A stretch of 64,000 nt of DNA, from positions 992,001 through 1,056,000 of the forward strand of contig NW_027270935.1 in assembly GCF_040938485.1 (NCBI RefSeq). Reading direction: 5' to 3'. Positions 32,201 through 37,100 of this stretch are shown in pieces. Position 1 is the first letter of the stretch. Each line of letters begins with the position of its first letter. Origin of the DNA: Diadema antillarum (taxonomy: Eukaryota). The notes under the pieces were generated by a model. That model was not told the origin of the DNA and did no database searches. It saw only the letters and a program-made list of their open reading frames with translations. Both the position numbers and the translations under genes were made by a program.

Positions 32201-34170
32201 ATTAAAAAGTGATAATAGAGTCATGTATAGTGAGGAGCATACATCCTATGTCAGTATGTAGATATTTTTGACAATGTCTATCTAGAGTGCATGCGCATGT
32301 ATTTCCCTGACAAAAATAGTAAAGGAGAAGCGTATATGTGTAGCTCATAGTGTCGTACATTACAAACAAAGTGATGTTTTGTTAGCACATTTTATAAGAT
32401 GCCATATTAGGATTAATGCAACTTTTTGATCACGGGTAATAAGCACACAATTCCATTTACATTTAATTGCACAATTATATCTGATGTATATATGATTGCA
32501 CATCTGATCAGTGGCATTGAGATCTTGGTGGTTGTCACTTCGAGTTAACATGTAATATGTGTAACTCATTTACCTGCATTTCCTCCCTAAATATATGGTT
32601 TACATCAGCAAAAACTGGTACCAGACTACTGATAATCTGATTCATGAGATAGAAGTTGATCAAAATGCTTCTGCAGCTACAGTCACTAGAGTCACTACAG
32701 TGCTGACTCTTACAAAACCTTTTGCAACCACTGACAACTAGGCATCCATTAGGCATATGTTATCAGCAGTCATCTACCAGCTTGAAACCAGTTTCGGATT
32801 ATGTGTGACCATATACATGTATTTAAGAACATAAATCTGCTTGATCATGAGGACACACCTAATAACAAGTATTTAATTCATGTTAATTGCAGGCCAAACA
32901 TCCACTTGGCTATCCACAACTGCAGCTCCAGAGACTTCACAGAATACCTCTACTGGTATTTAGAACTCCTCAAGGCAAACCAAGAACGGACACCCAAAGC
33001 AATCATCTATGCACGGTACAGCATATCTCATGAATGACACTTTCACTTTTCGGTGATCTGGGTATGGAGACTTATGTTATATTATGGCACTGGTGTGGAG
33101 TAATCCTGTCCATTCCTAAAATTCTTTCTGACGATTCTCATGAGATTAATACACAGATTAAAAAAAGGAATGTCCGGCATCATCTGCAGGGTAATGAACC
33201 TCCTAGCAAAACCAAAATCAAGTAATCTACATGACCTGCTTCAAAATGGTCAAGGTTCTGAAAAGAATTTTGCTCAAAATAATAGAAGACCTTCATGATA
33301 TCATATATATTCCTTTATCATGGTGAAATTTAACCACATGACAGCATATCAACACCATACAGATCTATAACGCTGATATGCAATACTCTTTACAATTGAA
33401 CTCCTTGTTCTACTTCATATTTCATGATTCTTGAGAATTCAATCATTTAGGTTGTGACCATCTTGAATGACTTTATCTAACGGTGAAAGGCCATCACACA
33501 CTATTTGACTTCTAGTCCCACGACTGACTGACTTTGGATATGAAATTAACAAGCATGTTTATTCTGAGGCTATATACTGTGATTCATTTAAGATCCAAAG
33601 TTTGTCAGTCATAGGACCAAAAACATATATAGTGTGCCATGGCCTTAATATGCACATTTCAAATTATCTTACAGCAACATCGACCACGTGGCAGAAATAT
33701 GGGCATGGATCAACATGGAGATGGGGTTCAAAGATGCTGATGAGAGAATCTGCGAAATGTACCACGGAAGTTCCGACACAAACAGTCAGCTTCGCATCAC
33801 TGAATCATTCAGAGGCATCAATAGCAGGATCCGGTGTGTTGTCGCAACAGTGGCATTTGGTTTAGGTATCAACGTTCCGGATGTTGAGTTTGTGCTACAC
33901 TTTGGCGTTCCGTCTGACATCTTGTCTTATTGGCAAGAAGTGGGACGTGCTGGGAGGGATGGGAGGACAAGTCAAGCTCACATGTACATTTTCCCAGGTG
34001 CCCTGAATTCGAGATGGACGGATGAGCAATTTATTGACTTGATCAATGCAGTCTTGAAGAAGACAAAGTGCTTCAGGAAGGGAATCCTGGAGTATCTCAC
34101 TGTTAAAGAAATGCGTGAGAGCATTCAGTCTGGCCCTGCTCACTCATGTTGCAGTGTCTGCGATGGGTAG
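29279..34170 (+). CDS. Minimal RecQ-like SF2 helicase, 415 aa, 6 exons (AcademH-type helicase)
   Basis: Exons 29279-29452, 30286-30430, 30929-31067, 31951-32121, 32893-33015 and 33675-34170 total 1248 nt with no frameshift or internal stop. Motifs: LPTGFGKS (I), ITPLKSLIINQV (Ia), ASPE, VDEVHC..KWG.SFRPDY (II and aromatic loop), TATAT (III), DRPNI, YHG, ATVAFGLGINVPDV (V), WQEVGRAGRDG (VI), then Zn-binding CFR...CCSVC and stop. No winged-helix or HRDC domain. Confidence 0.9.
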
Positions 34171-34172
34171 AT

Positions 34173-37100
34173 TCATGCCTTCTTGGATGAAGACGTAATG
34201 TTTTTCCACATGTCCAATTTTACCGAAAGACTCTGCAACTTTTCACCCAATTTCTTTGGATTTTGCATCATACATCTTCCTTCGAATGCCCCAAAGCCTG
34301 AGTGTTCCCTGCCTGGGATATAGTCCAAAAGGGCATCAGCCTGATATTCTTCAGTGAAGCGTCGTATGTCAGCGTCATATAAATCTGTCCTCTTGCCTCG
34401 AGTACTATCTTCCATGTCAACTATGCCTGCACCTGTAAAGAGGGCATCAAGGTCCTTTCCAAAGGGCCCACTCATTTGTGCGCATCTGGACAGTTGTTGT
34501 GGTGTAGTACTTCCCCCAGATGACTTTACCATTCCTGTGAAAATTAAGAGAGCGATGTTTGTCATGAGGTTAATTTATCGTATTGAAATTTAATATGTGA
34601 GGTTTTCATGCCTCTGCCGCAAGAGACACACTATTTTCAGTTTCTTCAGCCATACTTCTGTCCAGCTGTCTGTCCATCATTCTGTCTGTTCGTCCTTTGC
34701 CCATAATCTATTTTGTGGACAGCAAAACTTAACCATTTGAAGTATTTTAATAAGATGTTATATGAGTGGGCAATGTAGTGGTTATCAACTTTTCAGTGCC
34801 CCTGCTCAAGGTCGGAGATCTAGGTCATATTCTTACATTTCTTTTCAAGACGTATTGTAAGAAACATGTAAGTTGTAGGCATACAAGTCGCAATAGTAGC
34901 ATTTCTGATTGTTATTGTTTATATTGAAACAAATTTTTACCCTTGAATACAATAGACAATAAGTATGTTTTAGCTAAAGTAAGTTGTGAATCAATACTTA
35001 AACTCGAAGCCAATACTAAAAGGTATTATTTCTTCCAGACATTCCTAAGCATTGGCCCATTAATCGATTGTGAACAATTTATTATGATATTGTGTGTTGT
35101 TTCATATTTACTGTATGCTTAATGCAAAGTGTATAAGAAATCACATGCAGTTGGATTGATCATGTGCTTGAACAAGACCCCTAAAATGTCCGTAACTTAT
35201 TTATGCCTCCCCCATGAAGTGTCCCTGGAGGCATTGTGTTTTCAAGTTGTCTGTCCTTTTTTTTCGTTATCATTTTGTGGACAGCTTAATTCTAAAACCA
35301 TTTGAGATATCCGATGGTATGTCTATGTCACTTTTATGTGAAGATGCTCAAGGTCAGAGGTCAAGGACAAATGCTCAAAATTTCACTGTTTCCAATGTAT
35401 CTATTCCACGCCTGAACATATTTTCTAAAAACTTAGTGTATACATATACTACCCAATGAAGATTCACTTGAGAGAGATTTGGGTTATGAGGTCAAAGGTC
35501 AAGTGAAAATATCAACATTTCATTTTTTTCTCCATATGTCGGAAATGGTTGGAGGTATGATACTTACAGCTGCATGGAACTTAGCACACATGCATGTATT
35601 GACTGGCAGTGACTTTCTGGGGAATTTTCAATGTATTGTAAAACAGAAATGTTGCTATGGCTATATAGTAGCCATAGTTACATTTCTATTTTACAATACA
35701 CTGAACATGATTTCTGATAAGTTTCGGTTTGATGGGTTTGAAATTATTTCCTTCTTTTATGTTTTTGGTGCATTTAAATTCAAGAGCTCCTTTTCATCAG
35801 AATGATAGCAGGATTGTAGGTCCCTATAGGAGATATAATTTGATTACAGTTCAACCAAATTAAAAAAGTGTGACCCTTCTTTCTTTGTTGATTATGTGCT
35901 AAGTCAGTGGTGTGGTAGACATAGTGTATTTTTCCAGGCAATGAAGTGACTAAGGACTCCAATCCATACAGGCACCTGGTAGAAGATAGTGCATTTCCAT
36001 TATAATAAACATGGTTATAACAAAATTCCGGTTGCAAGGAAGTAAAAAAATTCAGGCAATAACATCATCCACTCTATGTTTTTTTTCAGTGCTTTTTGTT
36101 CTGTTACAATGAAATTTGGATGTAACAAAAAGAAAACCGGTGATTCCAAGGACTTTGTTATAATGAGGGGTCCACTGATGTATGTGCCAATTCTCTGTCA
36201 CCTTTCAATAACTTTAGAAAAAAAGCTTTTGACAGCAATACAAAAGAACTGGCTGTAATTACCTTCTACATCTGAAGAGAAAATTAAAAGTTTGTGGAGT
36301 ATAAATTAAGAATTATGATATTCACCCACATAATCCAAGTTCATGAATTCGTTCACGAGATCCAGTCCAATGTTTCCTCCACGTCTCCCTTTGGGGTTTG
36401 CCACTCTATTCCACACAAAGCTTAGCTGAAGCTTTGGATCAGCAAACCCTCCAACGCCTAATTAGCAATCAAAACACAATCAATCACAGAAAGGGCTCAA
36501 GTTTCTATAATGATCTGTAGAGAAGAAACAATGAAGTGAAGCAACTGGTGGGGTAGCTTGTGGTATTGCCAGCCCTTTTTTGTTACCTTGTTGTATTACT
36601 AAGTACAAGATAAAACTGAAGATAAAAGAAGAATGACATGGGGGCACGTGCTCTCCTTCACATATGTTTAAATAGTGTGCATGTACACTGATCAATTATA
36701 TCAAGAGCAAGAATGAAAGAACAAACATTAAGCTGCATTAGCATCATATTGGACAGTGTCAAAAAGTTTGTCAATCATAGACCAGTACATGTGTTCATGT
36801 TTGGTTGCAAGGAGTAACATTTTTCTCATCTGAAATGCATTGACAAGATATTGACTTAATTTGATAGCATGAATCAATGCAGCAGCATCCAATCATACCC
36901 ATCAAAAAGTTCCATTTCTGTATTTCATCATCACGATAAGTATCACTTTCAATGAAAAAACAATTCCAAAAGCATGTACAGGTTTATCATAAACTTGTCA
37001 TTCAATGAAACACTGTCTAAAACTCACATGCAAGAAAGTAATGCCCATTTATGAGATACTTCGGATGATTCTTCAGATGGAAGTCAATCATATCTGCTTT

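What the first reader, a model, noticed from the sequence alone, without database searches (positions are those of the whole stretch)
34030..34175. Convergent genes with stop codons 2 nt apart and a poly(A) signal inside the partner's coding exon
Seen: helicase TAG ends at 34170, then AT, then the transposase TGA (TCA on the plus strand, 34173-34175). Each 3' UTR must therefore run antisense through the other gene's last coding exon. A minus-strand AATAAA sits at 34030-34035, about 140 nt past the transposase stop, written in the helicase codons TTT ATT (Phe-Ile). Inferred: this phage-like compaction is unusual for genes with kilobase introns. It could force sense-antisense pairing (endo-siRNA/piRNA self-silencing) or mutually exclusive expression as an autoregulatory switch.
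Basis: partly seen in the sequence, partly recalled or inferred. Interest (0 to 1): 0.72.

Follow-up and report, generated by a model that had tools for sequence, protein, structure and literature searches.

The report
Tail-to-tail genes inside AcademH transposon
The two genes of a young 20-kb jumping gene of the sea urchin Diadema antillarum end only 2 bases apart on opposite strands, but this is one extreme of a variable spacer in a known transposon layout, and no regulatory role is shown.

Summary
The plus-strand RecQ-type helicase ends with TAG at 34168-34170. After 2 nt (AT), the minus-strand transposase ends with TGA (TCA, 34173-34175). A minus-strand AATAAA lies at 34030-34035 in helicase codons TTT ATT.

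Both stops are true C-termini. A RefSeq Diadema antillarum model (835 aa) maps exactly onto 11 minus-strand exons and ends at this stop. Relatives of both proteins end at the same positions.

The site is the midpoint of a 20,037-bp AcademH DNA transposon (28878-48914). It has at least 6 near-identical copies at 5 different left flanks.

The convergent layout is ancestral. It recurs in other D. antillarum families, D. setosum, Strongylocentrotus, Lytechinus, Branchiostoma and a metagenome scaffold, with stop-to-stop gaps of 2, 11, 142, 236, 349, 554, 803 and about 900 nt. The 2-nt family is sister to a 349-nt family, so the spacer is labile.

The AATAAA is not above chance (about 12% within 140 nt), and the Phe-Ile codons are not conserved. 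The helicase has no canonical signal for 1.7 kb.

Antisense overlap follows geometrically if both genes are transcribed. Earlier scan notes had already described this transposon on other DNA.

The parts
28878..48914 (.). Whole AcademH transposon, 20,037 bp. The left end starts TAACCCCGTCGCGGGG and the right end finishes GGTTA.
   Evidence: Homology with other copies starts at 28875-28878 and stops at 48915-48917. Five copies share the first base and have unrelated left flanks.
29279..34170 (+). RecQ-type helicase gene of about 6 exons. The open segments are about 29279-29473, 30286-30483, 30856-31068, 31919-32185, 32786-33034 and 33675-34170. Internal exon borders are approximate.
   Evidence: Helicase motifs are visible in the open frames: PTGFGKS, TPLKSL, DEVH, TATAT. 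Each exon matches separately in S. purpuratus and B. lanceolatum. Pfam Helicase_C. WRN/RecQ are the best solved relatives.
33675..34170 (+). Last helicase exon, including the TAG stop at 34168-34170.
   Evidence: Acceptor tacag at 33670-33674. The C-terminus lies 1 residue after the conserved CCxxCD motif, as in relatives, which end 1-4 residues after it.
34171..34172 (.). The 2-nt spacer (AT) between the two stop codons.
34173..34534 (-). Last transposase exon, including the TGA stop at 34175-34173.
   Evidence: RefSeq model P0002 residues 717-835 map exactly to 34532-34176. Acceptor cacag on the minus strand at 34539-34535. In long relatives this domain sits at the extreme C-terminus.
34173..45996 (-). 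Academ (DUF6589) transposase gene with PHD fingers, 11 exons. The start is at 45639 in the 835-aa model or 45996 in the 955-aa model.
   Evidence: Exact exon-by-exon mapping of P0002, and near-exact mapping of P0153. Pfam DUF6589 and PHD hits.
34030..34035 (-). AATAAA hexamer 138 nt past the transposase stop, inside helicase codons TTT ATT. It is a candidate poly(A) signal and its use is unverified.
   Evidence: A GT-rich stretch lies about 44-65 nt further downstream on the minus strand.
33558..33563 (-). Second minus-strand AATAAA, 610 nt past the transposase stop, in the last helicase intron.
34378..34383 (+). TATAAA, the only poly(A)-signal variant within 680 nt downstream of the helicase stop. 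It lies inside the last transposase exon. The first canonical signals are at 35859 (ATTAAA) and 36004 (AATAAA).
   Evidence: The C305 copy has T>C at 34380.

Best explanation
This is the midpoint of a recently active 20-kb AcademH DNA transposon of Diadema antillarum. Its two genes, a 6-exon RecQ-type helicase (+) and an 11-exon Academ transposase with PHD fingers (-), point inward from the two ends and finish tail to tail. This convergent layout is ancestral to the lineage, and the spacer between the stops changes freely in evolution. In this family the spacer has shrunk to 2 nt, most likely by a tolerated deletion. The 3'-end signals of each gene must therefore lie inside the other gene. The transposase may use the AATAAA at 34035-34030. 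The helicase has no canonical signal for about 1.7 kb, so it must use a weak one such as TATAAA at 34378 or read far into the transposase gene. Shown here: the anatomy, the true protein ends, the copy structure and the comparative spacer series. Inferred: the transcripts overlap antisense by at least a few hundred nt. The overlap is most likely a tolerated by-product, not a designed switch.
For: The stops, spacer and hexamer were read directly. Six copies are identical over the junction and have 5 different left flanks. The element ends were mapped. RefSeq P0002 (D. antillarum) maps exactly to 11 exons and ends at this stop. In 8 long relatives the last-exon domain lies within 2-15 residues of the C-terminus. 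Helicase relatives all end 1-4 residues after CCxxCD. The convergent layout recurs with gaps of 11, 142, 236, 349, 554, 803 and about 900 nt. RefSeq P0173 confirms the stop in the 11-nt family. In the tree, the 2-nt family is sister to the 349-nt family with support 99/98, and the 11-nt family falls outside. The spacers carry tandem duplications in Lytechinus and Strongylocentrotus, so this region is labile. The poly(A) hexamer is at chance level and is not conserved.
Against: No RNA data could be obtained. Transcription of both genes, the poly(A) sites and the overlap are therefore inferred. Two separate families in one genome have almost no spacer (2 and 11 nt), which could hint at a benefit of tight packing or overlap. 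Identical copies give no power to detect constraint at the junction.
Confidence: 0.7

Rival explanations
1. Built-in self-limitation. Overlapping helicase and transposase mRNAs pair into a double-stranded RNA of a few hundred bp. This RNA is diced into endo-siRNAs or feeds piRNA production, damping the element's own activity.
For: Antisense overlap is geometrically unavoidable if both genes are transcribed. If AATAAA at 34030 and TATAAA at 34378 are used, the complementary span would be roughly 390 nt. Convergent overlapping transcripts are known small-RNA sources in plants, flies and yeasts (PMC3439971 abstract). Two families in this genome have minimal spacers.
Against: No RNA or small-RNA data were obtained. 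The family has amplified very recently to at least 6 near-identical 20-kb copies, plus many short derivatives that share the right 1.66 kb at 98-99% identity. Silencing is therefore not strong. Relatives with 236-900-nt spacers show that coding-exon overlap is not needed by the lineage. In maize MuDR, extra antisense RNA did not suppress sense transcripts (PMC3440606).
Confidence: 0.15
2. Transcriptional interference. Polymerases from the two ends collide, so a given copy expresses either helicase or transposase. This would be a mutually exclusive switch.
For: The units are convergent with no room for terminators between them. No canonical poly(A) signal lies downstream of the helicase for 1.7 kb, which suggests read-through into the transposase gene.
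Against: Nothing tested here bears on it directly. With several identical copies per genome, exclusivity per copy would not give exclusivity per cell. Transposition presumably needs both proteins.
Confidence: 0.1
3. The abutting stops are not the real gene ends, because one gene continues into a further exon or is a dead relic.
For: The exon models here rest on homology and one RefSeq prediction, not on cDNA.
Against: Both C-termini are conserved in position across sea urchins, amphioxus and a metagenome relative. The RefSeq model ends at the same stop. All six helicase exons are open and carry intact motifs. The copies are near-identical and recently mobile.
Confidence: 0.05

Closest known systems
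AcademH lineage of Academ DNA transposons (Kojima 2020, Mobile DNA 11:15). The paper is not held in the library; it is cited through PMC10045372 and from my own knowledge.
   Same: An Academ/DUF6589-type transposase and a RecQ-related helicase sit in one element. It is found in animals, is large and intron-bearing, and has short terminal inverted repeats. AcademH is reported to make 9-10-bp target duplications (PMC10045372).
   Different: Nothing fundamental differs. This family has PHD fingers in the transposase and a 2-nt spacer between the convergent stops. I could not check whether the original description reports gene orientation or spacer length.
Maize MuDR (Mutator autonomous element)
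   Same: It is a DNA transposon with two convergently transcribed genes. Antisense RNA arises when termination fails in the region between them (PMC3440606).
   Different: MuDR belongs to a different superfamily. Its second gene, mudrB, is not a helicase. It keeps an intergenic region, its promoters lie in long TIRs, and its transcripts were mapped experimentally. Here there is no spacer and no RNA evidence.
Tail-to-tail cis-natural antisense gene pairs (convergent genes with overlapping 3' ends)
   Same: Two protein-coding genes lie on opposite strands, and their 3' ends must overlap. Such pairs can yield small RNAs (PMC3439971).
   Different: Here both partners belong to one mobile element present in several identical copies. 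The overlap covers coding exons and not only UTRs. Overlapping transcripts are inferred, not observed.

Membership tests
AcademH DNA transposon | Academ-type DDE transposase | tested here: met
   Pfam DUF6589 hits on the exons (8.6e-09). The full RefSeq model and its relatives carry PF20231. I take the link between DUF6589 and Academ transposases from the family context and from earlier scan notes, not from a curated statement read here.
AcademH DNA transposon | RecQ-related superfamily-2 helicase encoded in the same element | tested here: met
   Helicase_C at 3.2e-15. Best solved relatives are WRN, RecQ, RECQL4 and BLM. Motifs I, Ia, II (DEVH) and III are present in the upstream exons. The gene lies inside the mapped element ends.
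AcademH DNA transposon | 9-10-bp target site duplication | tested here: inconclusive
   No matching 9- or 10-mer flanks this copy. Its left flank is shared with a copy on C193, which agrees with the rearrangement reported in note s1-215118. Note s1-215020 reports a 9-bp TSD on another copy; I did not check this.
AcademH DNA transposon | Defined termini or short terminal inverted repeats shared by copies | tested here: met
   All copies start at the same base, TAACC..., and the right end reads ...GGTTA. The inverted repeat is only about 5 nt exact and imperfect beyond that.
Tail-to-tail cis-natural antisense pair | Two genes on opposite strands with convergent 3' ends at one locus | tested here: met
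   The stops are 2 nt apart and both are true C-termini.
Tail-to-tail cis-natural antisense pair | Overlapping mature transcripts observed | not testable with these tools
Self-silencing small-RNA source (endo-siRNA/piRNA) | Small RNAs of both polarities mapping to the overlap | not testable with these tools
MuDR-like two-gene convergent transposon (functional analogy only) | Two inward-facing genes within one DNA transposon | tested here: met
   The helicase starts about 400 nt from the left end. The transposase starts about 2.9-3.3 kb from the right end. Both point inward.

The most novel reading that the evidence does not exclude
Loss of the spacer makes an 860-bp segment (33675-34534) exonic on both strands. 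Every active copy would then produce perfectly complementary mRNA tails, which act as a built-in double-stranded RNA trigger and set a copy-number ceiling for the family. Near-zero spacers in two separate families (2 nt and 11 nt) would then reflect selection, by host or element, for this self-limitation.
Probability: 0.1. Interest if true: 0.6.

Novelty: new member of a known kind. Interest (0 to 1): 0.25.

Why it matters
If it held, a transposon with a hard-wired sense-antisense overlap of its two essential genes would be a neat natural system for studying self-limitation of mobile DNA. As it stands, there are two modest results. The inward-facing helicase/transposase layout of this AcademH lineage is conserved from sea urchins to amphioxus. 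The spacer between the genes is a hot spot of length change (2 to about 900 nt), so the 2-nt case is an extreme of ordinary variation. The sister families in one genome, with 2-nt and 349-nt spacers, offer a ready-made natural control for anyone who wants to test the small-RNA idea.

Tried and rejected
- Kojima 2020: the AcademH paper could not be read by DOI or by PMC id.
- Target-site duplication: an exact 9/10-bp search around this copy found none.
- Constraint at the Phe-Ile codons: the copies differ by 0-5 nt in 4 kb and not at that site, so the test has no power.
- A closer orthologue in another species: the best relatives outside this genome are only 57-61% identical.
- Exact look-ups: the 130-aa ORF, P0002, P0018 and P0087 returned nothing on record.
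- Word search: the last transposase exon gave one hit only, which is why the exhaustive HMMER search was used.
- Spliced helicase model: it was searched exon by exon only. The joined protein was not built or searched, so the RefSeq helicase model of this species was not retrieved.
- Rejected readings: an assembly artefact (6 identical copies) and a decayed relic (all exons open, exact match to a RefSeq model).
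Full report
**Observation**

On the plus strand the helicase frame ends GAT GGG TAG, with TAG at 34168-34170. Then come A and T (34171-34172). Then comes TCA at 34173-34175, which is the TGA stop of a minus-strand frame.

TTTATT at 34030-34035 is in frame as helicase codons Phe-Ile. On the minus strand it reads AATAAA, 138 nt past the transposase stop. The 961-bp junction stretch is 100% identical in five other places of the same assembly. It is therefore a real, replicated structure.

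**What the two genes are**

The plus-strand ORF carries Pfam Helicase_C (3.2e-15). Its best solved relatives are WRN, bacterial RecQ, RECQL4, BLM, RECQ1 and RECQ5. The upstream plus-strand open segments carry motifs I (PTGFGKS), Ia (TPLKSL), II (DEVH) and III (TATAT). This gives a six-exon RecQ-type helicase from the ATG at 29279 to 34170.

The minus-strand exon has no Pfam family of its own, and a word search gave a single hit. An exhaustive HMMER search found 221 relatives. The best, P0002, is 100% identical and is a RefSeq protein of Diadema antillarum (XP_071483013.1 / XP_071490836.1, 835 aa).

P0002 maps residue for residue onto 11 minus-strand exons of the window. The last exon covers residues 717-835 at 34532-34176 and is followed by the TGA. 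Other exons hit Pfam DUF6589 and a PHD finger. The full-length relatives carry PF20231.

Six helicase exons plus eleven transposase exons make 17. This agrees with earlier scan note s1-215020 on another copy.

**Are the stops the true ends?**

Yes, for both genes.

- Transposase: in every long relative the last-exon domain sits within 2-15 residues of the C-terminus. Examples are 889-1002 of 1004, 630-743 of 746, 660-767 of 773, 859-965 of 971 and 840-947 of 952.
- Helicase: relatives from D. antillarum, S. purpuratus, B. lanceolatum and a metagenome scaffold all end 1-4 residues after a conserved CCxxC(D) motif. This copy ends 1 residue after it.

A further downstream exon is therefore very unlikely.

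**The element**

Comparison with the other copies puts the left end at 28878, starting TAACCCCGTCGCGGGG. Five different left flanks precede that base. The window's own left flank is shared with one copy on C193. Homology on the right stops at 48915-48917, and the end reads GGTTA at 48914. The element is thus 20,037 bp.

Copies are 99.6-100% identical. The right 1.66 kb recurs at 98-99% in many short copies, with 5879 first-look candidates. This points to recent activity and to non-autonomous derivatives.

No 9- or 10-bp target duplication flanks this copy. That fits the rearrangement reported in note s1-215118. I could not fetch the right flanks of other copies.

**Is the tail-to-tail layout special to this family?**

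No. Searching the same genome with the two last-exon peptides found other families with the same convergent order. Relatives in other species show it too. The stop-to-stop gaps are:

| Source | Gap (nt) | Note |
|---|---|---|
| D. antillarum, this family | 2 | window copy |
| D. antillarum, family on C4 | 11 | RefSeq P0173 ends at the same stop |
| D. antillarum C118 and D. setosum | 142 | helicase degraded |
| Branchiostoma lanceolatum | 236 | helicase annotated with DEAD + Helicase_C |
| D. antillarum, C770/C783 | 349 | sister family of the window's |
| ENA metagenome scaffold | 554 | |
| S. purpuratus | 803 | all six helicase exons match; spacer has internal tandem repeats |
| L. variegatus | about 900 | three tandem duplicates of the last 53 transposase codons fill part of the spacer |

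A maximum-likelihood tree of the two last exons places the 2-nt family as sister to the 349-nt family (support 99/98). The 11-nt family lies outside that pair. The convergent layout is therefore old, reaching at least to the common ancestor of echinoderms and cephalochordates. The spacer is evolutionarily labile, and near-zero spacers are not one clade's invention.

**The poly(A) hexamer**

AATAAA occurs 0.88 times per kb per strand in this window, so one within 140 nt is expected about 12% of the time. The Phe-Ile pair is not conserved in any relative; the aligned residues are LM, MS and LK. Relatives show no signal at a matching distance:

- The 349-nt family has none within 800 nt for either gene.
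- The 11-nt family has signals at +427 and +565.
- Amphioxus has signals at +7 and +193.

On the minus strand the hexamer is followed by CA dinucleotides and, 44-65 nt further on, by a GT-rich stretch. It is therefore a plausible site, but nothing shows that it is used.

The helicase has no AATAAA or ATTAAA for 1689 nt downstream. The only variant nearby is TATAAA at 34378, inside the last transposase exon. Helicase transcripts may well run deep into the transposase gene.

**Mechanism**

- Shown: two intact inward-facing genes with true ends 2 nt apart, in a young multi-copy transposon.
- Follows by geometry: if both genes are transcribed, each 3' end lies antisense to the other's last exon.
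- Inferred: with the candidate signals, the complementary span would be roughly 390 nt.
- Not shown: any transcript, any poly(A) site, any small RNA.

The closest documented analogue is maize MuDR. It has two convergently transcribed genes, and antisense RNA arises there from failed termination between them. Added antisense RNA did not suppress sense transcripts in that system (PMC3440606).

Three things make a tolerated spacer deletion the more economical reading:

- The family's recent amplification.
- Healthy relatives with long spacers.
- The lack of any conserved signal.

**Limits**

- The helicase model was searched exon by exon only. The joined spliced protein was not built or searched.
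- The original AcademH paper (Kojima 2020) is not held. What I say of it comes from PMC10045372 and from my own knowledge.

**Verdict**

This is an ordinary, well-preserved member of a known transposon kind with an unusually tight gene junction. Earlier notes of this scan had already described the same 20-kb AcademH family on other DNA of this genome.

Noticed in passing
L019 (G000:C118 about 468 kb) and L066:79840-81300 (Diadema setosum OZ188196.1): An Academ transposase locus is shared by D. antillarum and D. setosum. The spacer is 96.6% identical, and the RefSeq proteins (1062 and 1063 aa) fall in one 90% cluster. The adjoining helicase is broken by stops and is duplicated. This could be an old orthologous insertion or a domesticated transposase.
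   Followed up: partly
L065:27782-28274 (Lytechinus variegatus CM031030.1): Three tandem duplicates of the last 53 codons of the transposase lie directly after its stop codon. A degraded helicase fragment follows on the other strand.
   Followed up: partly
L068:15668-16470 (S. purpuratus): The 803-nt spacer between the convergent genes contains tandem repeats of about 145 nt (76-88% identity).
   Followed up: no
window 47258-48915: The right-terminal 1.66 kb of the element recurs at 98-99% identity in many places (5879 first-look candidates, 40 scored). These are probably short non-autonomous derivatives of this family.
   Followed up: partly
window 48914-50346: Directly right of the element lies another repeat of about 1.43 kb. 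It has many copies at 96-98% identity elsewhere in the genome.
   Followed up: no
window 21974-28877 and L056 (G000:C193:1395831-1405830): The 6.9 kb left of the element is 99.7% identical to the left flank of the copy on C193. This is a segmental duplication, a rearrangement or an uncollapsed haplotype, not an independent insertion. Identical pairs on C770/C783 and C123/C1400 also suggest that the assembly holds duplicated haplotypic contigs.
   Followed up: partly
window 29279-34170; L067:14083-17130; L068:16471-21301: The six-exon structure of the transposon helicase is kept between sea urchins and amphioxus. Each exon matches separately and in the same order, so the introns of this mobile element's gene are old.
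   Followed up: partly
L062 (G000:C193:4443915-4453914) against window 40000-42257: The minus-oriented copy on C193 lacks about 370 bp (window 40914-41282). Its homology stops at window 42257, so that copy is internally deleted, truncated or interrupted.
   Followed up: no
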